Below are positions 1,054 to 23,969 of a DNA stretch of 64,000 nt, piece after piece. Below the pieces are notes generated by a model, which saw nothing but the letters and a program-made list of their open reading frames with translations, was not told where the DNA came from and did no database searches. Position 1 is the first letter of the stretch. Every line of letters begins with the position of its first letter. The position numbers were made by a program, and so were the translations under genes. The stretch covers positions 62,001 to 126,000 of IMG/VR virus record IMGVR_UViG_3300044957_000763. One strand, given 5' to 3'.

Positions 1054-1093
1054 ATGTATAAGTAGACCAGCGAGTTCCAACGCGGAGACAAAT

Positions 1094-8800: not shown

Positions 8801-11800
8801 ACCTAGATTACACAGTTGATGCAGACACTCAAGCAGTTACATTTGTTGATGGACAAACACCATGGGCTTCATATTTATATGAGCGAGTGTACACAGAATA
8901 TTACGTTGACCCATGGAATCCTCTGAAAGCAGATGTAGTTGTGTATATCAATGACAGTGTAGCAGAAATACCATACACACTGTACCCAGACGAGGGTCGA
9001 ATCAGTTTTTCATCAACGTTGAGTTCAGAGGATATTGTAAGGGTGACCATTATCCGTGCTGGGGCATACATATCAAACGTCGGAAGCACTCCGCATGAAG
9101 AACTGTTTAACGCAACGGTTGCTGGACTGACCTCACTGACAAAACTTGCTTATGAATTGGTTGGTAACGCAGTGGCAGGTACTGAAATTATTCTCAAAGA
9201 CCGCACTACTGTCCCAACATCTGCTGTACTATTAGAACTTCGATACCGTTCATTCCAAGAACGTGTAAGTGTAGTTATAGACCCTGACAACAATCGAGTT
9301 TATCTTGCGCATGACAGACAAGGCACCAATACGTTTCCAGCAGATTTCACAGAAGTATATTTGGTGGAAATTACCAATGTACTTGGTATTGAAGACGTAA
9401 TAAGTCAAGCCACTTCCAACCAAACATATCACATGAACTCGCTTATTGGCGTCAACACTATTCAGATGTCAATGACAGCCGAGGAAAAGGATGCTGGTTT
9501 CTACACTAATTTTTCGCGACCACCAGGACCCGGATTCAGTGCTGACCGTGGTCCCAAAAGCGCATTTTTCTTCAACTCATTGGTCGATTCATTTGACCTA
9601 ACTGGTTCATCGTCTAATGTGTGTTCAAAACTTGAACCTTCAGAACTTGACGCTCCATATAATCCTAGAAGCATCTACGTATTGTATGGAGTCAATCAAA
9701 CAGGCGAGGGCATGCGAGTTGGAACTGACAAAGGTGTTTGGATTTATGAAGACGCCAGATGGAAGAAGGAGTCATCTCTTAACGAATCCAATAGAGTGTA
9801 CTTCATTAAGAGTCGAGAAAGCACACTTACAATCGGTGCCAATAATGGTCTGTGGCAAAGAATAGGCGGAGAGTGGACTGCAAATCCATTGTATCCACAA
9901 AACATATTCGCACATGATAGCGGCGATTGGTTTGGTGGCACATTTGAAGCATTTGGTAAAAGCGATGGGTTGGCTTTTGTATGGACTGTTGGTGAGAATG
10001 CTTTCACATCAGACCCATTTATGCCGGTGGCAGAAACCAAAGTTTATGGTCTGTGGAAAAACAAATTCATACGCATCAAGGAAAATGGTGAACAACAAGA
10101 AATTGATGCACTGTATTTGTGTACAGAAAACGGTTTGTTTGGTGTAACTAACGGTGCGGCCACAGGAACTTATTCTGCATTCTTAGTCGGTCGTGAAATG
10201 TTTGGTGACAATCCACTTGAAATTTCGTACACCAATGCAGATGGTAATACGATTCAAGTCCCTGTGAAAATTTATCGTATTTTTAGAGGACTGCCTAGAC
10301 CAACATGTGATGGCAGCACTGCGAAACAACCAGTACCAATTCATATCTTAACAAACAATGGTGTTTACAAGGTTAGGAATTGGAGATGGTGTGACCCGTC
10401 TGATGCTGGTAGTTTGGATTTTTATGTTGAAAGTCATAACCTGGCAGGAATTACCTGTAATTGCTACGCACTAACAACACGCGCCTGCGCCGATGGTGTC
10501 GAACCATTGAGCAAGATTTTTGTTGGTACAGATTATGGTGTGTACCGTTCTTATAATGACGGTGCTGCATATGAGCGATGCGAAAGGATAAATAACGACA
10601 ATATAGCAGTTTACGATTTGGTATTCGATGGTCAATGTCTGATTGCAGCCACAGAAAGCGGTATTTTCTACTCAGATGATGATGGCGATACTTGGCACAG
10701 ACCAGACCCTGATAATGTCAATGCCTGTTTGCAAATTAGACCAACGGTTTCAACATCAGAAGAATTTGATGGACAATACATAGCGCAAACATTCAAACCG
10801 GTTACTGGTCAAACACATGTAATAAAAGTGGCTGCGTATTTGTCTGTAGAGTATCCAGAAACACATGATAACCCATCGGCATTGCTTGACAACTATCTGA
10901 GATTCACAATATGGTCAACTGATGTTAATGGTGTGCCTGACACTCTTCTTGACATCGCAAACGTTGATATTGTTGCATCAGACGTGCTCTATCCAAATTT
11001 CTGGTCTGCTGAATTTACATTTACACTGCCAAATCACACCAGTACATATGCTTTGGTGGCCGAAGAGGTGCCAGACCCAGGCGCCGGGGGGACTAAGGTC
11101 TTCAGGTGGCACAAAACAACACTGGACAATCCATATACTGACGGTAAGGCATTTAAGTATGACGGTGCGTGGTCAACTATTGATGGTTACGATGGCGGTG
11201 CTGCTGATTTGTTCTTCAGGGTGCACTTTGACCCAGAACCGGAAGCCACAGAGACTGTTGTTGATGTGGATTTATCAGAAGGAGAGGGCTATGGTTTTAT
11301 TGCAACTGACAACAACGCACTAACAACAGATTTCAAAATTGCGGCCGCTTGGGTTATTGATGACTCACAAAGTATGGACTGGGGAGACCCAGATGATGAT
11401 TTGGGTGATGGCTCACGAGGCGATGCACTAACATCTTTAATGAACGAAATATGGAGAAGAACCAAGTACATAAATATTGACTCAGACACATACTATCCAT
11501 CTTGGGGCTCTGTGTATACATTTGGGACAAGCATTATTGACAGAACAGATGGATACACAAATAATCCAGACCAGTTGGCTGTTTATCTTGGTGGTTTGTT
11601 TGAGAGAGGTAACAAATCAACACTAAATGAAGCCGCGCAACTTGCCACAACTACAATGTTCCCCCAGGCTATCATAGAGTCTATTTTGGAGTCTGATGAT
11701 TGGAGTATTTTAGTTGGCGAAGTTGTAGAGTATCTGAATGACCCTAGTAAACAATTGTTGCGACTTGATGACATAGTAGAATGGTTTGAATCACAGCCAG

Positions 11801-14007
11801 TTGGAACTCGTTCTGATTGGCCATACAATGACCCGGACCCAGAAGTCAGAATCAATACAATCAAAGACTATGAAGATGTCTCGGAGTATGTAATAACTCG
11901 ATGGGCAAATACCTTTGTGCCAATTATTTTTGTTATTGGCGACGGCGATGATACCGGTAGCCAAACTGCTGAAAATGTAGCATTGAGTGCTGTTGCTGGC
12001 TGGCCGGTTCACGGCACCAAAATTGTAGCACTGGGCACAGAAACATCACAAAGGCAAACCGACCTGAAAACCATGGGTGATGAGTCAGGTGGTATCTATG
12101 CAACTATCAAACGAGGCACATCCGGTGGAGACTGGGGTTTAGTCGAAAACACCCTAATGCACACTGGTGACAATTCTGTCTTTGTAAGCAGTTGGACAAA
12201 GTCGATTGATTTTGATGAATCTACATGGATTCGAAATGTTGAGGCTGGATTTAGCGCAGACCCAGGTTCAAGTTGCTCAATTCAATATCGTTTTACGCAA
12301 AACAGGGTTGATTGGTCTTCTTGGATTACACTTGAAAGCGGTGTCGCCGCAACTGTAGATTGTTTGGTTTATGGTTTGGAATTTACGGTATCAATGTCTG
12401 ATGGATGGGATGAATTCAATGACACACCAATCCGTCCTCAAGTCAATAGTATTACGTATACAGAAGTTACACCAGGAAGAAAATATCTAGTTACTGAGGC
12501 ACAGGATATTGATGGTATGTTGTTTGAATATTTACTGTCACCTATAATAGACATCCCAAGAACATCATCAATTACATGGGGTATTGTTCGCGGCAATTCT
12601 ACTGATTTTGCTGATTTTGAAACCGTGCGCACTAACCGCAAGGGCTGTCTTCCAAATAGACAACAAAGCATTCAATTTAGTGACGAAATTGTGCGCGAAT
12701 TGCTCAATACATCAACAGTTAATAATATCGCATACCAAGTCTTAGATGAAAACGGAGAACCAACCAATTGGTTGCCAGATGATACAATCAAAGTATACAT
12801 CGGTGGCATAGAAGTGCGACTAGACCCTGAAAACCCATATTACACTTATGATTATGCATTGGGCATCGTGTATTTTAGAGACGAGCAGCCTGCCGGAACA
12901 CAGGTAAGAGTAACTATCATTACTCCTCAAAAACTGTATGTATACGACGGGGAACCAACAACCACAACTGACAATCGTGTATATCGTGCTGTAAATGGTC
13001 GGTGGCCATATGACGCAACAGTGGTTGTGTTGGTGAATGGCAATATTATGCGCGGTGGTTACTGGATTTCTCCAGAAGAAGGTCTGGTTGTTTTCTTAAA
13101 AGAGCGCGAAGTGTCTGATATTGTCACAGTGTATATTCAGCACGCAGGAGTGTTTAGGGTTGGTTGTGAGATACTGGATTATAACAACACCGATGTCATT
13201 GTTGACAAACTTGGCGTGCATTACCTTCATTATGCCAATGTCAATGTTGAACGCTTCGGGTTATATTACACTCAAAGAGCCAATCGTAGTATTATCTTTA
13301 GTTATCAAAACCCAGACCCGCCGCAAATCACAGAAGGCACGTTGATAATTGCGCCTGATGACGACGCTACAGCATACACAAGACTTACCATAGAGTATCA
13401 ATATTCGTCTCCAAGCGATGCCAAGGAAAGAAAAACCACTACGAGTTGGTGGCGATATCGACCAGGAGAAAACACTGGTATTTATAGTGAGGTCGACGAC
13501 AATGATTTCGTTCGAATTTCAGCAATCAATGGTTTTGTAGGAGGTGAAGACTATGATAACCGAACTGTGCAAAGATTAATTGATATAGGCACACTTGATT
13601 TATTTAAGGACGGCGATAGGTGGTACGTAAAAGTCACACCACATGATGGGTTTAGTTATGGAGACGAGGTGGATTCATTACCTTCAATTATGCTTGGTGA
13701 TAACTCACCACCATGGGTGACTGATGCAAATGTATCTTCTCCGCAGAAGACCACGATTGATGGCAAATACTATGTGCCTGCAGGTGCAACTGTAACTGCA
13801 CAATATGTATTTGAAGACATTGATGGTACTAATGACGAAAGCACTGTTACATGGTACAACAAAGATTCAGAAGAATCGCTATATGTGGGTGCTAATTTGC
13901 CAACCGAGCTAGTTGTGTCGGGTCAAGTTTTATCATTCATAGTTTTGCCATATGATGGACAAAACTATGGAACAAGTGTTAGAAGCGACGAGGTAACTGT
14001 TCTCTAG
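5872..14007 (+). CDS. 2711-aa giant virion structural protein (BNR/propeller repeats, VWA domain, C-terminal Ig-like repeats)
   Basis: BNR-type motifs (VSENQGSSW, RSYNDGAAYE, YSDDDGDTW); phage motif VDGYTLGIGDRVLLKNQTITSENGVY; VWA with VIDDSQS...STLNEA...IFVIGDG; two C-terminal repeats ending VKVTPHDGFSYG and FIVLPYDGQNYG. Confidence 0.7.
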   Translation: MPKITDIYRYYTLTELRDVWYPGYDERNMVTTENQFSALYQFVGPGVLDGWDVTMMPSALRGDTIGSEELAERSSLIDAEPGTYLAKVYELLGSPSLMDELIWGQVVKVSSGRGIVGVFAAETVQDAYFRFQTPDTVFYVWAESGLCLASEGRCHITVPEDGLYEHDERATATYLATVEVTEHESYPGEGFVLSVTYDERRKKLRNLEGALQEALDLAFYRHVHLGGFDHPSKIQLSTYIVLETTGPAGSTILSIVVPNEYLDKWNNGEFGIPIVRLDDEVMSEGDYTINVASKRIFLKNSLPAGSAVTIVMPLFDQISLRMHEDSLITDSYQGLNPGRLRPIYITDGSTEVDENGQEHEVIFTWDGGLYRDAQVFLDEILVDSDLYEIIPEDGSINFDPALDGSIYTSESLTLILTELGQEIENTISGERLENLDASTVTRGTLDPTRIRQLDHVGLVRYQEIAELRPTKRLFQLGDDYRYYPEILSSQLQHATEVYHAYPTVNIDGSPYLLSTRRGLMQTSDISSGILLSTWNPDRGRPKKTIDNLLQDGSQKNHFNEVYLITQPGRNTLGKLYVSENQGSSWAAIRMPIDGDVVSGATDFWVSTQKTQSETNSGIKVFEYSTLYYLATDHGVWTASIPEDATSNDWVWSKEAYAEDLVYAIQEICTKNLTYSADGSSVESQDRTVYVGADDGFYINGDRLNTERVKGFYWIRSGNAQNQLIWWTDDAAYISHSGEHIVETNPDGSGQDMWIHPLANVGTVLFEVKVATVTDVTLPAVTSVDGYTLGIGDRVLLKNQTITSENGVYEFDGANLNLVAGSQLNTVRVQVNGAGSLNGSGWLCSVDGSNITYNNLWYRIAYDIGALFASAVLQADTSNQFFVFAKLGNSRCKSMVLTYDDNDILETPTVTVKTWSNNEQDSPIYAWSTSDGSIYTGSTRGIWRSTDSCEIWKRNSQQFTQYDTITIYDTSTLERLSDLDYTVDADTQAVTFVDGQTPWASYLYERVYTEYYVDPWNPLKADVVVYINDSVAEIPYTLYPDEGRISFSSTLSSEDIVRVTIIRAGAYISNVGSTPHEELFNATVAGLTSLTKLAYELVGNAVAGTEIILKDRTTVPTSAVLLELRYRSFQERVSVVIDPDNNRVYLAHDRQGTNTFPADFTEVYLVEITNVLGIEDVISQATSNQTYHMNSLIGVNTIQMSMTAEEKDAGFYTNFSRPPGPGFSADRGPKSAFFFNSLVDSFDLTGSSSNVCSKLEPSELDAPYNPRSIYVLYGVNQTGEGMRVGTDKGVWIYEDARWKKESSLNESNRVYFIKSRESTLTIGANNGLWQRIGGEWTANPLYPQNIFAHDSGDWFGGTFEAFGKSDGLAFVWTVGENAFTSDPFMPVAETKVYGLWKNKFIRIKENGEQQEIDALYLCTENGLFGVTNGAATGTYSAFLVGREMFGDNPLEISYTNADGNTIQVPVKIYRIFRGLPRPTCDGSTAKQPVPIHILTNNGVYKVRNWRWCDPSDAGSLDFYVESHNLAGITCNCYALTTRACADGVEPLSKIFVGTDYGVYRSYNDGAAYERCERINNDNIAVYDLVFDGQCLIAATESGIFYSDDDGDTWHRPDPDNVNACLQIRPTVSTSEEFDGQYIAQTFKPVTGQTHVIKVAAYLSVEYPETHDNPSALLDNYLRFTIWSTDVNGVPDTLLDIANVDIVASDVLYPNFWSAEFTFTLPNHTSTYALVAEEVPDPGAGGTKVFRWHKTTLDNPYTDGKAFKYDGAWSTIDGYDGGAADLFFRVHFDPEPEATETVVDVDLSEGEGYGFIATDNNALTTDFKIAAAWVIDDSQSMDWGDPDDDLGDGSRGDALTSLMNEIWRRTKYINIDSDTYYPSWGSVYTFGTSIIDRTDGYTNNPDQLAVYLGGLFERGNKSTLNEAAQLATTTMFPQAIIESILESDDWSILVGEVVEYLNDPSKQLLRLDDIVEWFESQPVGTRSDWPYNDPDPEVRINTIKDYEDVSEYVITRWANTFVPIIFVIGDGDDTGSQTAENVALSAVAGWPVHGTKIVALGTETSQRQTDLKTMGDESGGIYATIKRGTSGGDWGLVENTLMHTGDNSVFVSSWTKSIDFDESTWIRNVEAGFSADPGSSCSIQYRFTQNRVDWSSWITLESGVAATVDCLVYGLEFTVSMSDGWDEFNDTPIRPQVNSITYTEVTPGRKYLVTEAQDIDGMLFEYLLSPIIDIPRTSSITWGIVRGNSTDFADFETVRTNRKGCLPNRQQSIQFSDEIVRELLNTSTVNNIAYQVLDENGEPTNWLPDDTIKVYIGGIEVRLDPENPYYTYDYALGIVYFRDEQPAGTQVRVTIITPQKLYVYDGEPTTTTDNRVYRAVNGRWPYDATVVVLVNGNIMRGGYWISPEEGLVVFLKEREVSDIVTVYIQHAGVFRVGCEILDYNNTDVIVDKLGVHYLHYANVNVERFGLYYTQRANRSIIFSYQNPDPPQITEGTLIIAPDDDATAYTRLTIEYQYSSPSDAKERKTTTSWWRYRPGENTGIYSEVDDNDFVRISAINGFVGGEDYDNRTVQRLIDIGTLDLFKDGDRWYVKVTPHDGFSYGDEVDSLPSIMLGDNSPPWVTDANVSSPQKTTIDGKYYVPAGATVTAQYVFEDIDGTNDESTVTWYNKDSEESLYVGANLPTELVVSGQVLSFIVLPYDGQNYGTSVRSDEVTVL

Positions 14008-14034
14008 TAATCGAATACACGATATGAGGCACAT

Positions 14035-14958
14035 ATGTTAATTGATTTTCTAACACCAGAAGACATGTATCCAGAAATTATGGCGATGTCTATTGAAAAA
14101 GCCCAAAACTGGGGGCTTTTTATGTCGCATATTTCCGAAGCACAGAAACACACAAAAGGGGAGGGCATACTTGTGGCAGTATTGGATACTGGTGTTGCAT
14201 CCCATCCATGTTTAGATGGCGCAATTTTTGGTGATAAAGTCAACTTTACAGATTCACAAACTATTTTAGACCAGCAAGGTCATGGAACACACGTAGCCGG
14301 AATTATTGCCGCCAAAGAAATTAATGACAATGGTGTTATTGGAGTTGCACCAGAAGCACGAATCATGTCCGTAAAAGTCTTGAATGATTCTGCGCGTGGT
14401 AATTATGGTTGGATTGAACAAGGTATTCATCACGCAATTTCCAATGGTGCGGATATTATCAATCTGAGCCTGGGTTCACCACAGCCACCGCCTCCAAGTT
14501 TGTACGCGGCAATTCAAGAAGCTGCCAATAAAGGGATTATTGTGGTGGCGGCGGCCGGTAATGATGCGGCTGCAGTAAATTACCCCGCAAGATACGACGA
14601 AGTTATTGGGGTTGCTGCCGTAGACCAACAGGGGAATATGGCAAATTTTTCGTCACATGACACCGCAATTGATGTTAGTGCACCCGGTGTGGGTATTTAC
14701 TCCACCAGCTTAAACAATGGATATGCTGTATTAAATGGAACAAGTCAAGCGGCCCCGTTTGTGTCTGGTGTATGTGCTCTACTGCTTTCATACAGCCGTA
14801 ATACTGCCGGGGTTGAGCCAATTAAAGGGTATTTGAAGATGCTCGAGGCTCTTGATTCAGTATGCGACCCTAAGGGTCGCGCAGGGCACATCGGCAGGGA
14901 TGGAGATGTAGGCTTTGGTATCCCAGATTTTGCCAACGTAAATTGGAAACAACAATGA
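14035..14958 (+). CDS. Subtilisin-like S8 serine peptidase
   Basis: Catalytic triad motifs VAVLDTG, HGTHVAG and GTSQAAP, oxyanion AAGND; GAGG SD upstream; no signal peptide. Confidence 0.93.
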   Translation: MLIDFLTPEDMYPEIMAMSIEKAQNWGLFMSHISEAQKHTKGEGILVAVLDTGVASHPCLDGAIFGDKVNFTDSQTILDQQGHGTHVAGIIAAKEINDNGVIGVAPEARIMSVKVLNDSARGNYGWIEQGIHHAISNGADIINLSLGSPQPPPPSLYAAIQEAANKGIIVVAAAGNDAAAVNYPARYDEVIGVAAVDQQGNMANFSSHDTAIDVSAPGVGIYSTSLNNGYAVLNGTSQAAPFVSGVCALLLSYSRNTAGVEPIKGYLKMLEALDSVCDPKGRAGHIGRDGDVGFGIPDFANVNWKQQ

Positions 14959-15005
14959 ACTTTGGCACCTGCAGCATAATTCATGGTAACATGGTAGTCA
15001 AGTAA

Positions 15006-15569
15006 ATGAAGGTGTCTCAGCTACAAAAATGGACTAAATTAATTGCATACACTATCTCAGTATCTGTAATCTCGGCACTTGTTTGGCTAAATTTGTTTTC
15101 GCAGTTTTTACTGGTTACAGTAACTGGAAATTCTATGGAACCAACTTACAAAAATGGTTCTTGGCACTTGGCCAACAAAAAAAGCAGACAACTACAACGT
15201 GATGACGTAATTGTGTTCAAAATCAAAAACGAAACATACATCAAACGAATTGTTGCGTTACCCAACGATGAAATTCCAGTATGCTATGGAATAGATGAAG
15301 GTCAACTTTATGCTTCTATTGTTAAAATGGAGATTGTATGGATGGGATACCCACATGAATGGATACAAATTCCATTGGACTACATATGGGTAGAGGGGGA
15401 CGCTAAAAACAACATGAGTACCGGTTCTGGATATATTGGTCTAGTTCATGTAAAAGATATCATAGGAGTGATGAATTACACAGAACCCCCAGAGGTATTT
15501 TGGTATAAGTCGGTCGTAAACCAAAGACGTGTTAAAACTCCTGAAAGATTCAAAAAGAAACATGCTTAG
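15006..15569 (+). CDS. Signal peptidase I family (S26) peptidase
   Basis: N-terminal hydrophobic helix, then GNSMEPT (catalytic Ser), YIKRIVALP (catalytic Lys) and WVEGD box. Confidence 0.88.
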   Translation: MKVSQLQKWTKLIAYTISVSVISALVWLNLFSQFLLVTVTGNSMEPTYKNGSWHLANKKSRQLQRDDVIVFKIKNETYIKRIVALPNDEIPVCYGIDEGQLYASIVKMEIVWMGYPHEWIQIPLDYIWVEGDAKNNMSTGSGYIGLVHVKDIIGVMNYTEPPEVFWYKSVVNQRRVKTPERFKKKHA

Positions 15570-16227
15570 AACCAACAGATATGCACAATACAAGACTGAA
15601 GACCCAATGCGCAAAGTTATTCGTATTGGTCAAAGAGCATCATGTACTGTATCTGTTGTGACGCCTAAAGAATATGCAACTGGTAGCGGATTTCATGTTG
15701 GGCACGGTCTAATTGTTACAGCGGCTCATGTAGTAGGAGAGCAATCTCCTACTACATCAATTAATGTTACCTTTGATGGCATATCTATGTACCCGGCACA
15801 ATTTGTGTCTTCTAATCCAGAATTAGACATAGCTATTGTGCACTTACCAAAAATCAAAGAACACATCGGAAAGATAGAATTCGGAGACAGCAATGTGGTC
15901 GAACGCGGAGATATGATAGCAGTCATTGCGTCTCCAGAAGGATTTCACGACACAAGTACAGTTGGTAGGGTTACAAACATTCACCAGTCGCCAGAGATAA
16001 ATGAGGATTCTCCAGCGTGGAATGACTTAATTCTCATTGATATTGACCTCTTGCCTGGTTCGAGTGGCGGAATGGTGTTAAATCAAGATGGCAAGTTGAT
16101 TGGCATGGTTCTGGGTATACTAGACAGAACCGGACAAACACCGTTGTTAGTTGGATTGAATAGTGTTCAGCCAAGCAACAAACTAGTATCTATTGTGGCT
16201 GATGCCATACACTATATGTCGCGATAA
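15562..16227 (+). CDS. Trypsin-like (S1, HtrA-type catalytic domain) serine protease without PDZ
   Basis: GSGF, LIVTAAHVV, DIAIV and PGSSGG motifs; ATG 15562 chosen (15607 is an alternative). Confidence 0.88.
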   Translation: MLRTNRYAQYKTEDPMRKVIRIGQRASCTVSVVTPKEYATGSGFHVGHGLIVTAAHVVGEQSPTTSINVTFDGISMYPAQFVSSNPELDIAIVHLPKIKEHIGKIEFGDSNVVERGDMIAVIASPEGFHDTSTVGRVTNIHQSPEINEDSPAWNDLILIDIDLLPGSSGGMVLNQDGKLIGMVLGILDRTGQTPLLVGLNSVQPSNKLVSIVADAIHYMSR

Positions 16228-16230
16228 TGG

Positions 16231-16236
16231 TATTAT
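16231..16236 (+). promoter_or_regulatory. Extended -10-like element (TGG-TATTAT) 6 nt before the dnaJ ATG
   Basis: TATTAT-atcatt-ATG with no SD; same geometry recurs at five other genes. Confidence 0.45.
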
Positions 16237-16242
16237 ATCATT

Positions 16243-17307
16243 ATGAGTGGACAAACAAAATCTCCATATGAGACACTTGGGGTAAGCAATACGGCTTCGG
16301 CCAAGGAAATCCAGTCTGCATATCGTAAACTGGCGAGAGAATACCACCCAGACGTTAATCCAAGCCCCGATGCAGAAAATAAGTTCAAAGAAATTGCGAA
16401 CGCATATGCGCTATTAAGTGACCCGGAAAAAAGAAGAGATTTTGACAACGGCGTAATTGATGCCAAAGGAGAACCAGTATATTCTCATTCTGGCAGACAC
16501 GAATGGGGCGGCGGGAGTCCATTCGATTTTATGAACGGATTTGGATTTAACTTTCAGCCACAAGTTAGGAATTCAAATGTTGTAGTGCATTATGAGGTTA
16601 ATGCGTCAAAGTTGTTTTCAGAACATGACGCACATATTAAGTATCAAAAGGTGTCTTCGTGTCTGGAGTGTTCTGGAAGTGGCGGTACTGGCAATACAAC
16701 AATATGCAACGAATGTCAGGGTGTTGGACATAAGACACACGTCCGAAGGGCAGGCAACATGGTCATACAAGAGCGAGGTGTGTGTGATAAATGCAAGGGT
16801 AGAGGACAAACCTACGATTCTAATTGCAAATCATGTGATGGAATTGGACTCAAGACCTCAAATGAAGAAATATTTCTCAAAATACCTGCTAATTGCGCAT
16901 TCGGGAGTATGATTGTTTCAGAACAAGGTCATCAAGAAACATTATCGGCTCCGGCGGGTGATTTGGTAATTGTAATGGTGCCCATAAGCAAATATTGTAA
17001 ATTTGATGGATACACAGCTAACTATGAGTTACTTGTAGACCCTATAAGGGCGATGCTTGGATGCAAGGTAAAAGCCAATGGATTGAAGCCAGAAGAGGAA
17101 TTGATAATAGATATTCCTAAGATGACAGAACCGAACACTCGTATCGTATTAAAACACAAAGGTTTGTCCGATATGAATGGTAAACGACATGATGCAAATA
17201 TCGTAATTGTGTATAAGATGCCTGTCAACCTGACGGATGCGCAAGAAGCAGCGCTGAATGCATATTTGTCACCCAACGATAGTGCACCGGAGAAACAAAC
17301 AAAATGA
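16243..17307 (+). CDS. dnaJ: Class A DnaJ (Hsp40) co-chaperone
   Basis: J-domain with HPD, short G/F region, four CxxCxGxG zinc motifs (CLECSGSG, CNECQGVG, CDKCKGRG, CKSCDGIG), C-terminal GDL domain. Confidence 0.95.
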   Translation: MSGQTKSPYETLGVSNTASAKEIQSAYRKLAREYHPDVNPSPDAENKFKEIANAYALLSDPEKRRDFDNGVIDAKGEPVYSHSGRHEWGGGSPFDFMNGFGFNFQPQVRNSNVVVHYEVNASKLFSEHDAHIKYQKVSSCLECSGSGGTGNTTICNECQGVGHKTHVRRAGNMVIQERGVCDKCKGRGQTYDSNCKSCDGIGLKTSNEEIFLKIPANCAFGSMIVSEQGHQETLSAPAGDLVIVMVPISKYCKFDGYTANYELLVDPIRAMLGCKVKANGLKPEEELIIDIPKMTEPNTRIVLKHKGLSDMNGKRHDANIVIVYKMPVNLTDAQEAALNAYLSPNDSAPEKQTK

Positions 17308-17489
17308 GCATGAAAAGAACAATACCAGGTGGGCGAGTGGAATCTATTTACACTCAGTCTAAGAATGGCAAAGAGGTAATTGCAACTACTGTTACACCAG
17401 TAGATACAGAGGAAGAAGTAGCAATTACTGAAGAAACAGAAACACCAGAAACAGCCGTCGAAGAAGAACCTGAATCTAAAGAGCAATGA
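17304..17489 (+). CDS. Small acidic hypothetical protein
   Basis: 61 aa, ATGA-coupled to both neighbours, Glu/Thr-rich tail. Confidence 0.55.
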   Translation: MSMKRTIPGGRVESIYTQSKNGKEVIATTVTPVDTEEEVAITEETETPETAVEEEPESKEQ

Positions 17490-17941
17490 GCGAATGGTCT
17501 GAAGTAGCCAGGCAATATATCTCATTGGCGGCACCGTACATTGTGCCACCAATTGCGTTGTTGTTTGCCACATTCTTGTTCAAATTTATTCTAGCTAATC
17601 GAAAGACTCGACAATATGCCAAAATGTTGATGAATGTATTGCAGGGTCAACTCGAAGCATCTATTGGTGCTGAAAAAAGCAAACAAGTACTGGAGCTGTG
17701 GAATGATATTGTCAAAGAAACAGAACAAAACGCCAACAGCAAGTCCAAAACATATAGCGAAAAGTATTTCGTCACGAGGATGAAAAATGAAGTTGCTTTG
17801 AGTGAAGACGAGGAACGCGAAATATCCAAAATACTTGCAACAATGAGAAGACGCAGGGGCAAGGATGGAGAGGTTGGTGCGGCGAGCGATGACGAAGACA
17901 ACTACAAACTTCCGGTTTTACCATGTCTATGTGAACTATAG
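17486..17941 (+). CDS. Hypothetical membrane-anchored protein
   Basis: 151 aa, one hydrophobic segment YIVPPIALLFATFLFKFIL, coupled start. Confidence 0.6.
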   Translation: MSEWSEVARQYISLAAPYIVPPIALLFATFLFKFILANRKTRQYAKMLMNVLQGQLEASIGAEKSKQVLELWNDIVKETEQNANSKSKTYSEKYFVTRMKNEVALSEDEEREISKILATMRRRRGKDGEVGAASDDEDNYKLPVLPCLCEL

Positions 17942-17974
17942 GATGCGATAATATAATAAGGCACAGCCTGGATT

Positions 17975-20662
17975 ATGGTTCGTATAGTCATAGATAACGC
18001 AGTATCAAACATACTTGGAAATTTTCATACTGACTACGAAGTCTCTAATGAAATTAGAGAAGAACTTCGTAATGCCTTGGCGTATCAAGTTAGTGGTGCC
18101 GAATGGTCTGAAAAGTACAAAGATGGCACCTGGGACGGAAAGATTTCTCTATACAACAAAAGAGAGAAAAGTTTTCCAACCGGATTGTTATTTAGGGTCA
18201 AACAAGTACTACAAGACAGACATGTTGAGTTTGTGGTAGAGAACAAGCGCGAGAAACCAGAAACAAACAAACTTGTAACAACTGCGTTTCAAGAATACAA
18301 AAGAGCCCTGCGGCCTTATCAAGAGTTAGTTGTTGAAGCCGCTAAGGCTCGTGGTCGAGGTGTGTTATCAGTCGCCACTGGCGGCGGAAAAGCCCTGTGT
18401 GTCAATACCCCAATCCTAACCGCAAATCGAGGATGGGTCACCATGGGTGAAATCGAAACGGGAGATATTGTATTTGACGATAATGGAAATACGACTCGTG
18501 TCTTATGCGCTCATTCAGTTTTGTTTAACCAAACATGTTATGATATTGAGTTTTCTGACGGTAGCACAATCACTGCCGATGCTGAACATCTGTGGAGTGT
18601 AAAAGTCACCTCTGGATACAGTAACAAATCTCAAATGATTACACTAACAACTCAGCAAATGCTCAATGATATGCTCAATGAAGGCAGTAGCACTTGGAGA
18701 ACCAAAAAGCGAAAGGGAAGAACTGAAAAACGTTCAATGTTTTATATCGAGAGACCAAGTGTGATTTCATATCCTTCAATTGATGCAAAATTAGAGCTAG
18801 ACCCATATTTGCTCGGTTGCTGGCTTGGTGGTGGCGGTACCAAATCTGGCATATTCAGTACTTCCGAGGATTATTTTATAGATGTATTTGCTAAACATGG
18901 ATTCATTCTTAGGCATGTGAGCAAATATGACTATTACGTCAAGGGCATGCGACAAAAATTGCGCGCAATAGGTGTTTGGGACAATAAACATGTACCTGAG
19001 CAATATCTACGAGGCGATATCACAACAAGACAACATGTTTTAGCAGGAATTATAGACACAGACGGTCACATCGACTCTCGTGGTCGAATAGAAATCACAT
19101 TATGCAACGAAAGGCTTGCCAAAGATGTGGTTGAATTATGTAGAGGTCTTGGTGCCCAGGTGAATGCTAAGAAATCAGATGCAAAACTAAACAAAATAAT
19201 TGTTGGAAGTAGATGGAGGATAAAGATTTCACCAAATAACAATATCATGTGTTTGCTCCCTAGAAAATATGAAAAAATAAATTACAAACGAAGAAAAACT
19301 ATCGGTCGCGTGTATGTTAAATCAATCAACGAACGTAGTTCAACTCCGGTGAGATGTATTACTGTTGATTCCGCGAGTAGGCTATATCTTACAGGCGAAA
19401 CACTGATTCCAACACACAATACTATGATTTCTGCCGAACTGATAGCACAGCTTAAAGCATTGCCAGTCGTATTTATTGTGCCATCAAAGACCTTGATGCA
19501 CCAAACCAGAAAAGAGTTTCACAAATACCTTAGAGTCAACGGAGAAAAGACCAAAATAGGTATTGCCGGCGACAGTATTTGCGACCTAAACCCAGATGGA
19601 GTCAACATTCTTACGTGGCAAACAGCCCTGCAAGCATTTGACGAGAAATACACATCCAAAGGAGATAAGGTGGTGTATGATGAGTTCACTGGATTACAAG
19701 TACGCAAAACCAAAGCACAACTCATTGATGATGTGAATGATGCCACCAGAAAACTCAAACAAGCCGAAGAGAGCAAAGGTGATACCAAAGCAGCAAAGGC
19801 TGCACTTAAAAAAGCACAAACACGACTCAAAAATCGAGAACAACAACTCATCAACAAGAGCCAAATTAAGCAACTCATCAGAGACACTCCTGTTTTCATT
19901 GTAGACGAAGCACACACGGCTGCAATTGTCATTCAGCGACTTGGAGAACACGCGGGCAAATCGTATTACCGCTTTGGTGTCACTGCCACAGCATGGAGGG
20001 AGGACAATCAAGAGATACGCATTGAGGGCACATTTGGGCGCATTCTCATTAACATTCGCCCTAGTGACTTGATTAGAGACGGATGGTTGGTAAGACCGTA
20101 TATATTCATGGTCAAAATCAAGCATATCGAAACACACTCAGACTATAACGATGCGTATTTGAAACATGTTGTGAATTGTTGGGAGAGAAACTATCGAATT
20201 AAGCAATTTGCTGAAGGACTTTTTGCGGCCGGAAGAAAAGTTCTCATACTTGTAGAAAGACTTGAGCACGGAGAAATTCTAGAACAAATGGTTTACAATT
20301 CGGTTTTTGTGCCAGGCAAAGACGATGGTAGCGGAAATGAAACCATTACAGAAGATGTAGAAAACTACAGATTGGAAATGCTTGCACGATGTGGTCGTGG
20401 TGAGCACATTTTGATTGCTACACAATGGGCCAATGTCGGTGTTGATGAACCTGCTATTGATTCATTGATACTTGCGGGGTCTAATCGGTCTTCTGTTACC
20501 ACATTTCAACAGGTTGGAAGAATCCTAAGACCGGCAGAAGGTAAAGAAAACGCTATTGTTATTGATTTTTCAGACGAACAAGATGATTTACATGACCACT
20601 CTCTCAAAAGGAAGAGAGCCTACGCACTTGAACCTGAATTCAAAGTATACAGAGTTCAATAA
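17975..20662 (+). CDS. SF2 DNA helicase (UvsW-like), intein-containing
   Basis: N-terminal EKYKDGTWDGKISLY; LRPYQ Q-motif; Walker A VATGGGK|T split by an intein; IVDEAH; GVTATA; QQVGRILR. About 552 aa after splicing. Confidence 0.9.
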   Translation: MVRIVIDNAVSNILGNFHTDYEVSNEIREELRNALAYQVSGAEWSEKYKDGTWDGKISLYNKREKSFPTGLLFRVKQVLQDRHVEFVVENKREKPETNKLVTTAFQEYKRALRPYQELVVEAAKARGRGVLSVATGGGKALCVNTPILTANRGWVTMGEIETGDIVFDDNGNTTRVLCAHSVLFNQTCYDIEFSDGSTITADAEHLWSVKVTSGYSNKSQMITLTTQQMLNDMLNEGSSTWRTKKRKGRTEKRSMFYIERPSVISYPSIDAKLELDPYLLGCWLGGGGTKSGIFSTSEDYFIDVFAKHGFILRHVSKYDYYVKGMRQKLRAIGVWDNKHVPEQYLRGDITTRQHVLAGIIDTDGHIDSRGRIEITLCNERLAKDVVELCRGLGAQVNAKKSDAKLNKIIVGSRWRIKISPNNNIMCLLPRKYEKINYKRRKTIGRVYVKSINERSSTPVRCITVDSASRLYLTGETLIPTHNTMISAELIAQLKALPVVFIVPSKTLMHQTRKEFHKYLRVNGEKTKIGIAGDSICDLNPDGVNILTWQTALQAFDEKYTSKGDKVVYDEFTGLQVRKTKAQLIDDVNDATRKLKQAEESKGDTKAAKAALKKAQTRLKNREQQLINKSQIKQLIRDTPVFIVDEAHTAAIVIQRLGEHAGKSYYRFGVTATAWREDNQEIRIEGTFGRILINIRPSDLIRDGWLVRPYIFMVKIKHIETHSDYNDAYLKHVVNCWERNYRIKQFAEGLFAAGRKVLILVERLEHGEILEQMVYNSVFVPGKDDGSGNETITEDVENYRLEMLARCGRGEHILIATQWANVGVDEPAIDSLILAGSNRSSVTTFQQVGRILRPAEGKENAIVIDFSDEQDDLHDHSLKRKRAYALEPEFKVYRVQ
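18392..19420 (+). mobile_element. Class 3 intein (343 aa) with LAGLIDADG homing-endonuclease domain
   Basis: Starts Ala (ALCVNTPI), block B TADAEHLW, block F VRCITVD, block G IPTHN followed by Thr+1; HEN motifs LLGCWLGGG and LAGIIDTDG. Confidence 0.92.
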
Positions 20663-20708
20663 GGTGTAAACTTGCTTTTTGTAGAAGTTGATTATAGGTC
20701 TGGTCATT

Positions 20709-21041
20709 ATGCGAAGTCACAAAATCTCTGGTATGCCGCGAAAGTGTCTCAATCGCAATTGCGATGGGTTGTTCACAAAAGGTTCTCATCTCGGTTATAT
20801 GATGCAGTCAGAAATCGAAGTTTATGCTGTATTGCGATGTCCAACATGCCTTGACACATTTGTAATAAGTCAGCCCATGTCTATGGCGCATGAATACTAC
20901 AATAAGTTGCCAAAGACAGTAAAAGAAGCGGTTAAAGAAGGTGAACCTATTACAGTGGAAGAAATGCGCAACTTCCGTAAAAAATTATCTAAGCCAGAGA
21001 GCCTCAGGAATCTACTTGATACCGATAACAATTTAGAGTAG
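20709..21041 (+). CDS. Hypothetical zinc-ribbon protein
   Basis: CLNRNC and CPTC pairs; first ATG at 20709 (20733 possible). Confidence 0.6.
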   Translation: MRSHKISGMPRKCLNRNCDGLFTKGSHLGYMMQSEIEVYAVLRCPTCLDTFVISQPMSMAHEYYNKLPKTVKEAVKEGEPITVEEMRNFRKKLSKPESLRNLLDTDNNLE

Positions 21042-21090
21042 ATTGGCATAATTAACATAGCTGGTTGAATTCAAACAGTATAAATTCACT

Positions 21091-22815
21091 ATGAGTAAAA
21101 AAATCAAAGCTCTAGGAATCGACCTTGGCACCACTAACAGTGTTGCAGCATATTTAAGGGAAGATGGTTCCATAGAAATCATACCAAATGCCGAAGGTGA
21201 AAGACTGACACCTTCGGTCTTTGCGGTATGGGACAACGACGAAGTTATCGTTGGTAAGCTGGCACACGATGGTGAGTCCATGAATGCCCATAGTACCGTA
21301 AGGTCTATCAAGCGACATATGGGCACTAATTATCGCGTTGAAGTTCAAGGCAAGAAGTATAGCCCAGAGCAAATTAGCGCGGCTATTTTGTCCAAAATCA
21401 AAAATGACGCCGAAGCATATCTTGGATACAAGGTCGATAAAGCTGTTATTACTGTGCCAGCATATTTCAACAGTGATGAGCGCCAAAGTACAAAAACCGC
21501 TGGTGAAATCGCTGGATTTGAGGTACTTCGTGTTATCAATGAACCAACAGCGGCAGCATTGGCCTATGGGCTCGACAAAAAAGAAGGTCAGACAGTTGTG
21601 GTTTACGACCTAGGTGGAGGTACTTTTGATATTACAGTGCTGCAACTAAGCGGTGACGGCATGTTTAATGTCAAATCCACAAGTGGAGACACACATCTAG
21701 GTGGTGATGATTTTGACCAGGTCATTATGGATTACTGCAGAAATCAATGGCATGATTATGTGGCCAATAATGACTCAGAGACCGCTTTGCGAACTGCTGC
21801 TGAATCCGCCAAGAAGGTTCTGACATCTACACAACAAGCCAAAATAGCAATTCACGGACTGCCAGTGGTAACTCTAACAAGAGATGTCTTCAATCATTTA
21901 ATTGAACCAATTGTCATGAAAACCAAGTCTTGTTTAGAATTAGCACTTAGGGACGCAGGCTTAAATGCTTCTAAAATTGACGAGGTTGTCTTTGTGGGTG
22001 GTTCTACGCGCATACCCCTTGTTGCATCCATGGTCGAACAATGGACTGGCAAAAAGCCAAATAAGAGCGTGAATCCAGACGAGGCTGTTGCTGTTGGCGC
22101 AGCTAGACAAGCCGCTATACTATCTGGCCAGACTGCACCAGATATTCTTTTGGTTGACGTCATACCATTAACTTTGGGAATTGAGACCGCAAGTGGTGTT
22201 ATGGACAGGATGATAAATCGCAACACGACCATTCCAACAGAAGCCTCAAAAATGTTCACAACTACTGAAGACAACCAAAGTTCAGTAGCAATCAAAGTTT
22301 ATCAAGGTGAACGACTAAAGGCCGATGGCAATAAACTCCTGGGTCAATTCAAACTAGAGGGGATTCCAGAAAAACCCAGAGGTGTTCCTGAAATTGAAGT
22401 TAGTTTCCATGTTGATGCTAACGGAATCCTAAGCGTTAAGGCCAAAGAACTTGTAAGCCAAATCGCGCAAAAGGTTGTACTTACTGGAAGTTCAAGTTTG
22501 ACATCTGAAGAAGTTGAACAAATGATGAGTGACGCCGAGAGCTCTCGAGCAGATGACGAAAAATACTTTGTACTAGCTGCGGCCCAAGATAAGATTCGAG
22601 GAAGAATACATCAGATAGAGTCACTTAGACGTGATGCATGGAGTGTACTAAGTACAAGCACAAAAGAAGAAATTGATGATGCGTTTCAGTCGTTAACAGA
22701 TGCCCAAGAAGACAAAAACATTAAGTTGCTTGAGTCTCTTGATGAATCATGTCAAGAAATTATGGTCAAGGCCAATAAAGAATTGTCTGAATTTGCTTCG
22801 AAGTTGATTAGATGA
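21091..22815 (+). CDS. dnaK: Hsp70/DnaK chaperone
   Basis: [45 protein letters not shown], linker [21 protein letters not shown]. Confidence 0.96.
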
Positions 22816-23471
22816 GAATTACACCAGTAGAAGCGCACGCAAATGATACAAAACTTCGCGAACAATATGGCGATATTTTGTGTGGCATAGACGAAGTTGG
22901 ACGAGGCTCCTGGGCCGGGCCATTAGTGGTTGGGGCTGTAGTATTACCAAAAGATGTCATCATACCCAAGCTAACAGACAGCAAACAAATCTCAGCACAA
23001 TTAAGGGACTCTCTTGCAGAGCAAATCAAAGAAGTCGCCCTGGCGTGGACTGTTTTTCAGATTGAAGCGAACTCTATTGACAGAAAGGGACTTACTTGGG
23101 CAAACGCAATTGCCTCATACGAAGCAGGCAAGATAATCCAGCAAATAATTAATGTTGACTTGTTCGTCTTAGACCAAATGCCTGAATGTGACCTTGAACC
23201 GCACATTATGATGGCAAAGGCAGACTCTCTATCACATGTAGTTGCTGCTGCTTCAATCATAGCCAAGACATACAGAGATAATCTAATGAATGAACTCGGA
23301 GAGCAATATCCAGAATATCATCTCGATGCTCACAAGGGTTATGTATCACCATTGCATAAAATTGCTGTTAGGCAATACGGAAAAGTTCGGGGATTACATC
23401 GGTTCTCGTATAAGGTAGATGGAATCAATCCAGATGCTGGAAGAAGTGACTTACTGAGGCGCAAACAATGA
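22812..23471 (+). CDS. rnhB: Ribonuclease HII
   Basis: CGIDEVGRGSWAGP, DSK, KADSLSHVVAAASIIAK, HKGY. Confidence 0.93.
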   Translation: MRITPVEAHANDTKLREQYGDILCGIDEVGRGSWAGPLVVGAVVLPKDVIIPKLTDSKQISAQLRDSLAEQIKEVALAWTVFQIEANSIDRKGLTWANAIASYEAGKIIQQIINVDLFVLDQMPECDLEPHIMMAKADSLSHVVAAASIIAKTYRDNLMNELGEQYPEYHLDAHKGYVSPLHKIAVRQYGKVRGLHRFSYKVDGINPDAGRSDLLRRKQ

Positions 23472-23968
23472 AATACATTAACTTGAATTCCGAAGAAATG
23501 ATTTCAAAACTAAGGTCTGTGGATGAGCTTAAGGTCATAGGTATTACAGGATTCAAAATTATTGTATCACCACAGACTGATGAAGTAGGTCTGGTTTTTG
23601 TAGCCAACAACAACGAATATGTCATACCACTAAATCATCTTGAGTCAATAACAGCGTCATACCATGTAAACGGATTCGCCAAACACTCACACATTCCAGA
23701 CATTTATGCGACATACATTCATCTAACAAAAAGTTTAGGATTCACACTAACACATGCGATTCTTGAGTCAAAACATGGTGATGTGATGTATGGAAGATTA
23801 GTATGGAAAGACAGTGAAGGCAAGCTGTTTACTCAAATTGTCACACCTGGTGATGTATTTATTTTTTCAAACACATTCGGAGTCACACCAGGTGTGGTTA
23901 TAGCGTTGTTAGAAGATATGTGCACCTTAGACGAGTGGCCATATCACTATGATGTTGACGAGTGGTAG
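23468..23968 (+). CDS. Bifunctional-nuclease (BFN/DUF151)-like protein
   Basis: YVIPLNHLES...IPDIY...SLGFTLTHAILESKHGDVMYGRLVW...VTPGD follows the DUF151 pattern but is divergent. Confidence 0.6.
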   Translation: MKYINLNSEEMISKLRSVDELKVIGITGFKIIVSPQTDEVGLVFVANNNEYVIPLNHLESITASYHVNGFAKHSHIPDIYATYIHLTKSLGFTLTHAILESKHGDVMYGRLVWKDSEGKLFTQIVTPGDVFIFSNTFGVTPGVVIALLEDMCTLDEWPYHYDVDEW

Positions 23969-23969
23969 A

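What the first reader, a model, noticed from the sequence alone, without database searches (positions are those of the whole stretch)
14035..22815. Candidate phage proteostasis/maturation module: three proteases, DnaJ and Hsp70 directly behind the giant virion genes
Seen: S8, S26 and S1 proteases, dnaJ and dnaK lie co-oriented immediately after about 14 kb of very large structural genes; a second J-protein is at 38617. Known: some large phages carry single chaperones or J-proteins. Inference: this is a self-contained fold-and-process pipeline for the 1200-2700-aa virion proteins. I do not recognise this combination as a described system.
Basis: partly seen in the sequence, partly recalled or inferred. 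Interest (0 to 1): 0.7.

Follow-up and report, generated by a model that had tools for sequence, protein, structure and literature searches.

The report
Conserved protease–chaperone gene block in megaphage
A 479-kb freshwater phage and about three dozen relatives carry three intact serine proteases, a DnaJ and a DnaK behind a 2,711-residue protein; this is new as a conserved arrangement, but nothing yet shows it is a dedicated folding-and-cutting line for the giant proteins.

Summary
Window 14035-22815 encodes an S8 subtilisin, a membrane-anchored S26 signal peptidase I, a PDZ-less HtrA-like S1 protease, a full DnaJ and a DnaK, all co-oriented behind giant ORFs. All have intact catalytic motifs and dN/dS of 0.03-0.18.

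RNase HII follows dnaK.

The window belongs to a 478,840-bp lake-water megaphage. Thirty-seven related loci show these linkages:
- the giant protein precedes S8 in 34 of 35 loci;
- S8, S1, DnaJ and UvsW are linked in every locus that extends far enough;
- S26 is missing from the block in 4 of 36 loci and sits elsewhere in two whole genomes;
- DnaK travels with RNase HII, tube and gyrase genes, and lies 30-40 kb away in one complete genome.

So the set is a conserved repertoire in two separable blocks, not one tight module. S26 acts outside the membrane and the giant proteins have no signal peptides. The giant proteins' virion role is unproven.

Best reading: a phage-borne Hsp70 system plus proteases working in two compartments. 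A specific S8/S1 link to the giant protein is possible but untested.

The parts
1..1053 (+). 3' end of a 2,483-aa giant ORF (genome 55602-63053), part of a 37-kb co-oriented array of giant ORFs
   Evidence: no Pfam hit; 57% identical to the G001 relative
1037..2062 (+). 341-aa ORF of unknown function, highly conserved (78% to the G001 relative)
2117..5842 (+). 1,241-aa protein with a PA14 (carbohydrate-binding type) domain at residues 758-889; no signal peptide
   Evidence: orthologues precede the 2,700-aa gene in relatives
5872..14007 (+). 2,711-aa protein, function unknown; the immediate upstream neighbour of S8 in 34 of 35 related loci
   Evidence: 69% identical to the G001 relative
14035..14958 (+). 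S8 subtilisin, intracellular type: no signal peptide, no classical prodomain, a conserved 40-residue N-terminal extension, and D/H/N/S catalytic residues conserved
   Evidence: dN/dS 0.03; 97th percentile of conservation
15006..15569 (+). S26 type I signal peptidase with an N-terminal membrane anchor and a conserved Ser/Lys dyad; the fastest-evolving member
15562..16227 (+). S1 (HtrA/DegP-like) protease domain without PDZ domains; H/D/S triad conserved; the ORF opens at 15529 but the probable start is Met at 15562
16243..17307 (+). Type I DnaJ: J domain with HPD, four CxxCxGxG zinc-finger motifs, C-terminal domain; short G/F region
17304..17489 (+). 61-aa ORF with an acidic tail, overlapping the dnaJ stop and the next start; conserved after dnaJ in relatives
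17486..17941 (+). 151-aa protein with one N-terminal transmembrane helix; undetected in the block in the four S26-less loci (L099, L181, L182, L184)
17975..20662 (+). UvsW-type SF2 helicase interrupted in its Walker A loop by a LAGLIDADG intein (about 18392-19423)
   Evidence: intein-free orthologues of 551 and 559 aa
20688..21041 (+). Small zinc-ribbon protein (probable start 20709 or 20733); stays next to UvsW when DnaK moves away
21091..22815 (+). DnaK/Hsp70, 574 aa, with canonical ATPase and substrate-binding motifs
   Evidence: dN/dS 0.04
22812..23471 (+). RNase HII, start overlapping the dnaK stop
23468..23968 (+). 166-aa conserved protein of unknown function (ESKxGD motif)
38617..39618 (-). 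Second J-domain protein (HPD present, no DnaJ zinc finger or C-terminal domain), 73% identical to the G001 relative

Best explanation
Window 14035-22815 is part of a conserved core region of a clade of freshwater megaphages. It gives the phage its own Hsp70 system: a type I DnaJ, a second J-protein and a DnaK. No GrpE is encoded, so nucleotide exchange would have to come from the host, or the system runs without it. The region also encodes three serine proteases that work in two compartments. The intracellular-type subtilisin and the PDZ-less HtrA-like protease lack export signals, so they act in the cytoplasm. The signal peptidase I is anchored by one N-terminal helix, so it acts at the outer face of the membrane.

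The genes form two separable linkage blocks rather than one operon-like module. Block A is the giant 2,711-aa protein, S8, (S26), S1, DnaJ, small ORFs, UvsW helicase and the zinc-ribbon ORF. Block B is DnaK, RNase HII, the 166-aa ORF, the tube-like pair and gyrase.

My inferred mechanism has three parts:
- The chaperones, together with a GroEL encoded about 52 kb further along the genome (just past the window's end), raise folding capacity for a proteome that holds 16 ORFs over 1,000 aa.
- S26 removes signal peptides from the phage's own exported proteins. A heuristic finds about six candidates. It does not act on the giant proteins.
- S8 and S1 cut cytoplasmic targets. The neighbouring giant protein is the most obvious candidate substrate, but this is unproven.

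Shown here: gene identities, intact active sites, purifying selection and linkage patterns. Inferred: compartments, from sequence features. Not shown: substrates and timing of expression.
For: Identities and motifs. Membrane anchor on S26 only, and no signal peptide on S8, S1 or the giant ORFs. About six other phage ORFs have signal-peptide-like N-termini. No GrpE. GroEL at genome 136266-137783. Sixteen ORFs over 1,000 aa. dN/dS 0.03-0.18. S8 at the 97th, DnaK at the 80th and the second J-protein at the 88th percentile of conservation against a 56%-median relative. Linkage across 37 loci. Split into two blocks and a relocated S26 in whole records. Tightly packed or overlapping genes with no + strand terminator-like site between genes.
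Against: The giant protein's near-invariant adjacency to S8 (34 of 35 loci) would fit a specific enzyme-substrate pair better than a general quality-control role. No expression data exist, because all sequencing runs that hold the sequence are DNA. There are no virion proteomics. Compartment assignment rests on a hydropathy heuristic, not on a trained predictor. Loci were found through S1, so the conservation of S1 itself is by construction. Many loci are close relatives of one another.
Confidence: 0.45

Rival explanations
1. One reading: a dedicated maturation line in which DnaJ and DnaK fold the 1,200-2,700-aa virion proteins and S8 and S1 (with S26) trim them.
For: The giant protein lies directly upstream of S8 in 34 of 35 loci, across lineages down to 36% S1 identity. 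The genes are co-oriented and tightly packed. S8 is as conserved as the tube-like proteins. No canonical prohead protease family was detected.
Against: S26's active site is extracytoplasmic and the giant ORFs lack signal peptides. S26 and DnaK leave the block in whole genomes. L099 keeps S8-S1-DnaJ without giant genes upstream. Virion status of the giant ORFs is unverified. The missing prohead protease is uninformative, because Pfam capsid models also find nothing. Whole-genome collinearity explains much of the synteny.
Confidence: 0.2
2. A replication-associated set. DnaJ and DnaK remodel replication or recombination complexes, as host DnaK and DnaJ do for phage lambda and for plasmids (established knowledge). 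The proteases belong to the same non-structural gene region, and the giant genes merely abut it.
For: DnaJ is linked to the UvsW helicase in every locus, including the rearranged L099. DnaK travels with RNase HII and gyrase. The nearest cultured-phage S8 homologues lie among primase, DnaB, RuvC and polymerase genes (Moorella phage MTATph1) or RNR, dUTPase and ligase genes (Bacillus phage FADO). Other megaphages have DnaK and DnaJ near gyrase and no proteases within 20 kb either side of DnaK.
Against: Tube-like structural genes sit in the same block as DnaK, so gene neighbourhood in this genome does not sort cleanly by function. There is no known role for subtilisin or HtrA-like proteases in replication.
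Confidence: 0.15
3. Host takeover or counter-defence. The cytoplasmic proteases destroy host proteins or defence factors, and the J-proteins hijack or titrate the host Hsp70 network.
For: The literature raises this possibility for phage DnaJ and DnaK and cites DnaJ-dependent phage sensing by bNACHT25 (PMC12619734). Jumbo-phage peptidases have been proposed to target host proteins (PMC7824862). No substrate is evident in cis for S1 or S26.
Against: Counter-defence genes are usually variable and patchy. Here S8 is among the most conserved genes of the clade, and the arrangement is stable across about a dozen sub-lineages.
Confidence: 0.12

Closest known systems
DnaK and DnaJ genes of other huge phages (Lak phages, the LR7565xx huge phages, 'moraphages' of PMC12619734)
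   Same: Phage-encoded full-length Hsp70 with a DnaJ within 0-12 kb, often near gyrase. Freshwater origin and a proposed role in folding or counter-defence.
   Different: DnaK is only 41-48% identical. Those genomes show no homologue of this S8, S26 or S1 by tblastn, and no proteases within 20 kb of DnaK. The moraphages reach only 307 kb.
Bacillus intracellular subtilisin proteases (ISPs) and their homologues in large Bacillus and Moorella phages
   Same: Subtilisin fold with an intact triad, no signal peptide, and a short N-terminal extension in place of the roughly 77-residue prodomain. About 40% identical to phage copies.
   Different: The cultured-phage copies sit in replication or nucleotide-metabolism regions, not next to giant ORFs, an S1 protease or DnaJ. 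Whether the extension is ISP-like and inhibitory was not tested.
Bacterial type I signal peptidase (LepB/SipS family)
   Same: Passes the NCBIfam equivalog cut-off. Has one N-terminal anchor, the SM.PT serine box and the KR lysine box.
   Different: Phage-encoded. No genuine phage record in GenBank carries a homologue; the five matches are weak (28-34% identity over 48-66% of the protein), and the one large record among them also holds bacterial-type DnaK and DegP matches, so I read these records as carrying bacterial DNA. The box E Asp and Arg are replaced in most members of the clade.
HtrA/DegP family proteases
   Same: The protease domain aligns to Thermotoga HtrA, with the H/D/S triad kept.
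   Different: No PDZ domain and no signal peptide, about 220 aa. It forms its own clade and drops to 37% identity or less against cellular HtrA.
T4 UvsW with its small partner UvsW.1
   Same: A UvsW_N plus SF2 helicase followed by a small conserved ORF that stays with it. The comparison to UvsW.1 rests on my own knowledge of T4.
   Different: The small ORF is a zinc ribbon with no detectable similarity to any solved structure. The helicase carries an intein in some members.

Membership tests
Peptidase S8 (subtilase) | Asp-His-Ser triad with the oxyanion Asn in subtilisin order | tested here: met
   D in VAVLDTG, H in GHGTH, N in AAAGND and S in GTSQAAP are conserved in 9 of 9 orthologues. Pfam 195 bits against a cut-off of 21.8.
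Type VII secretion mycosin (TIGR03921) | Score above the equivalog cut-off; signal peptide and C-terminal membrane anchor | tested here: not met
   211 bits against a cut-off of 278.75. No hydrophobic segment at either end.
Signal peptidase I (S26, TIGR02227) | Score above the equivalog cut-off; Ser/Lys dyad; N-terminal membrane anchor | tested here: met
   76.8 bits against a cut-off of 47. The SM.PT and KR boxes are conserved in 8 of 8 orthologues. Hydrophobic segment at residues 10-40.
HtrA/DegP (Do family, TIGR02037) | Trypsin-like domain followed by one or two PDZ domains; periplasmic targeting | tested here: not met
   Triad present, but 86 bits against a cut-off of 416, no PDZ hit and no signal peptide.
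Type I DnaJ (TIGR02349) | J domain with HPD, G/F-rich linker, four CxxCxGxG motifs, C-terminal substrate-binding domain | tested here: inconclusive
   HPD, the four zinc motifs and the C-terminal domain are present and conserved. The G/F region is short. 231 bits against the equivalog cut-off of 377.
DnaK (Hsp70) | Full nucleotide-binding and substrate-binding domains with the conserved interdomain linker | tested here: met
   Pfam HSP70 607 bits. Aligns over residues 6-491 to Geobacillus DnaK, with motifs kept. NCBIfam PRK00290 scores 647.9 against a cut-off of 648, which is borderline.
Complete DnaK-DnaJ-GrpE chaperone system | A GrpE nucleotide exchange factor encoded with DnaK and DnaJ | tested here: not met
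   No GrpE match in the 479-kb genome, while the control genomes matched.
Caudoviral prohead (capsid maturation) protease | Membership of S77, S78, S78_2 or ClpP-like families, encoded next to portal and capsid genes | tested here: inconclusive
   None of the four families was found. Pfam capsid models also find nothing, so divergence hides the structural genes. The position of S8 and S1 relative to the capsid gene is unknown.
Operon-like functional module (one self-contained system) | Components stay together when genomes rearrange | tested here: not met
   S8-S1-DnaJ-UvsW stays together. DnaK moves 30-40 kb away in G002, and S26 moves 90-176 kb away in G002 and G003. L099 lacks the giant gene, S26 and DnaK nearby.

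The most novel reading that the evidence does not exclude
The intracellular-type subtilisin, perhaps with the HtrA-like protease, is the dedicated morphogenetic protease of this megaphage clade. It would process the 2,711-aa protein encoded immediately upstream, and possibly head proteins, in place of a canonical herpesvirus/HK97-type prohead protease. The adjacent DnaJ would deliver these very long substrates to the phage's own Hsp70. That would be a new class of virion maturation machinery in tailed phages.
Probability: 0.15. Interest if true: 0.75.

Novelty: new variant of a known kind. Interest (0 to 1): 0.5.

Why it matters
Huge phages are known to carry chaperones, but what those chaperones do is open. 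This clade offers a fixed, strongly constrained trio (subtilisin, HtrA-like protease, DnaJ) that sits beside one particular 2,700-residue protein in about three dozen genomes. That arrangement makes a concrete enzyme-substrate hypothesis testable by co-expression.

The clade also shows a type I signal peptidase as a conserved phage gene, which I could not find in any genuine cultured phage record. This implies that these phages manage their own secreted proteins.

If the specific link fails, the result is still useful. It shows that apparent 'modules' in collinear megaphage genomes can be boundary effects, and that only rearranged relatives discriminate between the two.

Tried and rejected
- Close-relative scans of IMG/VR with single proteins (DnaJ, S8, DnaK, tube-like) found nothing useful. 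Only the alignment-based scan worked.
- No nucleotide match in GenBank phages.
- Giant ORFs: there were no hits in PHROGs, none in Pfam beyond PA14 and a weak BNR-like repeat, none in PDB sequences beyond the PA14 domain, and none in the ESM Atlas. A second Atlas call failed on length.
- I hypothesised that the zinc-ribbon ORF upstream of dnaK is a DnaK partner, either an exchange factor or an Hsp70 escort. Complex prediction gave no verdict, which is evidence neither for nor against binding. Its AlphaFold model (pLDDT 72) has no PDB match. Synteny then showed that the ORF stays with UvsW when DnaK moves, so I dropped the idea.
- The hunt for a canonical prohead protease and capsid gene by Pfam was negative and uninformative. 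Scanning the ten most conserved unassigned ORFs found only metabolic and replication enzymes.
- Sigma-70 promoter and terminator scans showed no enrichment. A 7-mer enrichment scan of upstream regions gave motifs but no clear regulatory link between the giant genes and the proteases.
- No RNA sequencing run holds the region, so co-expression could not be examined and read laying was not used.
- IMG/VR labels G003 a provirus. I saw no GC step or clear host flank in the parts I fetched.


Full report
**What the window is.** The window is bases 62001-126000 of a 478,840-bp IMG/VR virus record with terminal repeats. I found a 127-bp exact terminal overlap. It carries gyrase A and B, a PIN-PhoH fusion, RecD2, UvsW, a tube-like protein and many ORFs without any family. 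The sequencing runs that hold it are lake-water and freshwater-sediment DNA metagenomes. No RNA run holds it. It is therefore a freshwater megaphage. No GenBank phage is similar at the nucleotide level.

**Checking the observation.**
- S8, 14035-14958, E 2e-57.
- S26, 15006-15569, E 6e-17.
- Trypsin_2, 15529-16227, E 3e-23.
- DnaJ with J domain, zinc finger and C-terminal domain, 16243-17307.
- HSP70, 21091-22815, E 3e-182.

The second J-protein at 38617-39618 on the - strand has an HPD motif. Upstream lie the tail of a 2,483-aa ORF, a 341-aa ORF, a 1,241-aa PA14-domain protein and a 2,711-aa protein. These form the end of a 37-kb array of co-oriented giant ORFs starting at genome position 38826.

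- a 61-aa acidic ORF that overlaps both of its neighbours;
- a 151-aa single-pass membrane protein;
- an 895-aa UvsW-type helicase split in its Walker A loop by a LAGLIDADG intein;
- a small zinc-ribbon ORF.

RNase HII overlaps the dnaK stop, and a conserved 166-aa ORF follows. The genes are packed with gaps of 0-50 nt or with overlaps. No terminator-like site lies between genes on the + strand.

**The proteins themselves.**

S8 aligns to subtilisins with Asp, His, the oxyanion Asn and Ser all intact. It has no signal peptide and no classical prodomain. It has a conserved N-terminal extension of about 40 residues, like intracellular subtilisins, which are among its PDB matches. Its best NCBIfam match, mycosin, falls below the cut-off.

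S26 passes the NCBIfam signal peptidase I cut-off (76.8 bits against 47). It keeps the serine and lysine boxes in all eight orthologues and has one N-terminal hydrophobic anchor behind a lysine-rich N-terminus. Its catalytic domain should therefore face outward.

S1 is an HtrA-type protease domain with its triad kept, but with no PDZ domain and no signal peptide. Orthologues are all about 220 aa, so the real start is the Met at 15562.

DnaJ has HPD, four CxxCxGxG motifs and the C-terminal domain. DnaK aligns over its ATPase and substrate-binding domains to Geobacillus DnaK, with motifs kept.

The genome has no GrpE. It has a GroEL at 136266-137783. S8, S26, S1 and DnaK are each single-copy.

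**Relatives and synteny.** Single-protein scans of IMG/VR found almost nothing. A metagenome scan with DnaJ found two contigs at about 92-95% amino-acid identity with identical gene order, including the intein.

A protein search with S1 gave a graded series of orthologues from 92% down to 43% identity. This series is sharply separated from cellular HtrA, which reaches 37% at most. Their contigs show the same order: PA14 giant, 2,600-2,700-aa giant, S8, S26, S1, DnaJ, small ORF, membrane ORF, UvsW, small ORF, DnaK, RNase HII, 166-aa ORF, then the tube-like pair and gyrase on the other strand.

An alignment-based scan then added 27 IMG/VR loci on contigs up to 441 kb, plus three genome-collection loci.

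Counting across the 37 loci:
- The 2,711-aa homologue is directly upstream of S8 in 34 of 35 assessable loci.
- S8 and S1 are adjacent, with or without S26 between them, in 36 of 36.
- S26 lies between them in 32 of 36.
- DnaJ follows S1 in every locus that extends far enough, and the UvsW helicase follows DnaJ likewise.
- DnaK follows the zinc-ribbon ORF in 26 of 28.

A tree of S8 plus S1 shows roughly a dozen well-separated branches. The S26-less loci are scattered among them. Because the loci were found through S1, S1's own presence is by construction. Several loci are near-duplicates of one another.

**What the rearranged relatives say.** Much of this synteny reflects general collinearity. 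A 531-kb relative (see below) matches 345 of 476 ORFs in conserved order at a median 56% identity. The informative cases are therefore the exceptions.

In L099, S8-S1-DnaJ-small ORF-helicase is intact. Upstream, however, lie opposite-strand sugar-modification genes. S26 and the membrane ORF are missing. No DnaK lies within 19 kb downstream. The following genes are homologues of the block that in my genome lies on the far side of the giant array.

In G002, a complete 441-kb record, the giant-S8-S1-DnaJ-UvsW-zinc-ribbon block is at 151-172 kb. DnaK-RNase HII-166-aa ORF, the tube pair and gyrase sit together at 194-204 kb. S26 is alone at 337 kb.

In G003, S26 lies about 90 kb from the block, among phage genes.

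So the repertoire is conserved across the clade, but linkage resolves into two blocks:
- Block A: giant protein, S8, (S26), S1, DnaJ, small ORFs, UvsW, zinc ribbon.
- Block B: DnaK, RNase HII, 166-aa ORF, tube pair, gyrase.

S26 moves between locations. The membrane ORF is undetected in the block in all four S26-less loci. It was not found beside S26 at its new site in G002.

**Selection.** Against relatives with dS of about 0.8-2.6, dN/dS is 0.03 for S8 and S1, 0.04 for DnaK, 0.08 for DnaJ and 0.09-0.18 for S26. Against the 531-kb relative, the conservation percentiles are as follows:

| Protein | Percentile of shared ORFs |
|---|---|
| S8 | 97th (79% identity) |
| Second J-protein | 88th |
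| GroEL | 85th |
| 2,711-aa protein | 84th |
| DnaK | 80th |
| S1 | 66th |
| DnaJ | 35th |
| S26 | 11th |

S8's rank is level with the tube-like proteins and GyrB. All of these genes are functional, and S8 is a core gene of the clade.

**Are the giant ORFs virion proteins?** I could not show it. They have no PHROG, virion Pfam or PDB-sequence match. The exceptions are the PA14 domain, a weak BNR-like repeat, and a 65-residue stretch similar to a cyanophage 'virion structural protein'. Three indirect points favour a structural role:
- Several are very conserved, at 69-78% identity.
- A head-tail-adaptor-like gene lies just beyond the array.
- Tube-like genes are near.

None of the giant ORFs has a signal-peptide-like N-terminus.

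**Mechanism.** The three proteases cannot form a single linear pipeline, because they work in two compartments. S26 should process exported proteins. A heuristic scan finds about six phage ORFs with classical signal-peptide-like N-termini and none among the giants. S8 and S1 are cytoplasmic. Their nearly fixed position beside the 2,711-aa gene makes that protein the obvious candidate substrate, but nothing tests this.

DnaJ, the second J-protein and DnaK form a plausible phage Hsp70 system that must borrow a nucleotide exchange factor. With GroEL and 16 ORFs over 1,000 aa, a general folding-capacity role is the simplest reading.

Against a purely structural link, the nearest cultured-phage S8 genes lie in replication and nucleotide-metabolism regions. 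DnaJ is always next to a helicase. DnaK travels with RNase HII and gyrase. Other DnaK-bearing megaphages have DnaJ and gyrase nearby and no proteases within 20 kb either side of DnaK. They also show no homologues of these three proteases.

Canonical prohead proteases were not detected, but neither was any capsid protein. That absence therefore says nothing.

**Comparison with the literature.** Phage DnaK and DnaJ in large freshwater phages have been reported, with the role left open: folding, assembly or counter-defence (PMC12619734). DnaJ is noted as sporadic in jumbo phages (PMC7824862). I found no paper describing a subtilisin, signal peptidase, HtrA-like protease and DnaJ arrangement, or a phage signal peptidase I in jumbo phages. 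The only GenBank 'phage' records matching S26 do so weakly, and I read them as carrying bacterial DNA.

**Verdict.** The strong form does not hold for S26, for the Hsp70 system's autonomy, or for tight linkage of DnaK, and it is untested for S8 and S1. That strong form is a self-contained pipeline for giant virion proteins. I rate it a new variant of a known kind (phage-encoded chaperones and proteases), of moderate interest. It carries one specific, testable and potentially novel sub-hypothesis about S8 and S1 and the 2,711-aa protein.

Noticed in passing
G001 contig C5 (JAFDWS010000002.1, 1,363,254 bp) positions 1 to about 531,300; loci L107-L146: The first ~531 kb of a 1.36-Mb contig of an 'Armatimonadota bacterium' MAG is a complete, circularly permuted, collinear relative of this phage (345 of 476 ORFs, 26-83% identity). 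At about 531.5-533 kb GC steps from 0.55 to 0.60 and phage matches stop. This is either a half-megabase integrated phage, which would also be a host clue, or a chimeric assembly. There is no repeat between the contig start and the junction, and no tRNA at the junction.
   Followed up: partly
window 18392-19423 (inside UvsW, 17975-20662): A LAGLIDADG intein is inserted exactly in the helicase Walker A motif (GGGK / T). It is absent in the L095 and L098 orthologues (551 and 559 aa). In L096 it is reduced to a mini-version whose first Cys is replaced by Ala, so splicing there is doubtful. Two paralogous inteins lie elsewhere in the genome, at 437772-438872 and 375797-376951.
   Followed up: partly
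genome 316,000-369,000 (outside the window): The GC-rich motif GCCCCGGAA occurs 33 times, almost all within a 53-kb region and mostly on the + strand, often about 35 nt upstream of ORF starts. It may be a region-specific regulatory or repeat element.
   Followed up: no
window 20688-21041: A small, highly conserved zinc-ribbon ORF (CxxxxC ... CPxC) always follows UvsW and stays with it when DnaK is elsewhere. Its position resembles that of T4 uvsW.1. Its predicted fold has no PDB match.
   Followed up: partly
window 15006-15569 and 17486-17941: The signal peptidase and the 151-aa single-pass membrane protein co-vary. The membrane ORF is undetected in the block in the four loci that lack S26 there (L099, L181, L182, L184). 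It was not found beside S26 at its relocated site in G002.
   Followed up: partly
G003 (IMGVR_UViG_3300042879_006196, 347 kb) and G005 (300 kb): Two relatives carry a second, more canonical DnaK (780 and 729 bits) besides the clade-type copy. IMG/VR labels G003 a provirus, but I saw no GC step or clear host flank in its last 67 kb.
   Followed up: partly
genome 136266-137783 (about 10 kb past the window's end): A phage-encoded GroEL-type chaperonin, 70% identical to the G001 relative. No GrpE is present in the genome. GroES was not checked.
   Followed up: no
window 23468-23968: A conserved 166-aa ORF after RNase HII has an invariant ESKxGD motif and an acidic, Trp-containing C-terminus. It matches no family.
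   Followed up: no
window 23970-26104 (- strand): Two paralogous ORFs of about 340 aa, one weakly tube-like (Phage_tube_2, 25 bits, below the cut-off), are among the most conserved genes of the clade (76-83%). They sit between RNase HII and gyrase, so structural and replication genes are interleaved here.
   Followed up: no
window 14000-24000, upstream of gene starts: No Shine-Dalgarno-like sequence is evident upstream of the genes in this region. A TGCGATAA motif (36 copies in the genome, 12 of them upstream of ORFs) lies 31 nt before the UvsW start.
   Followed up: no
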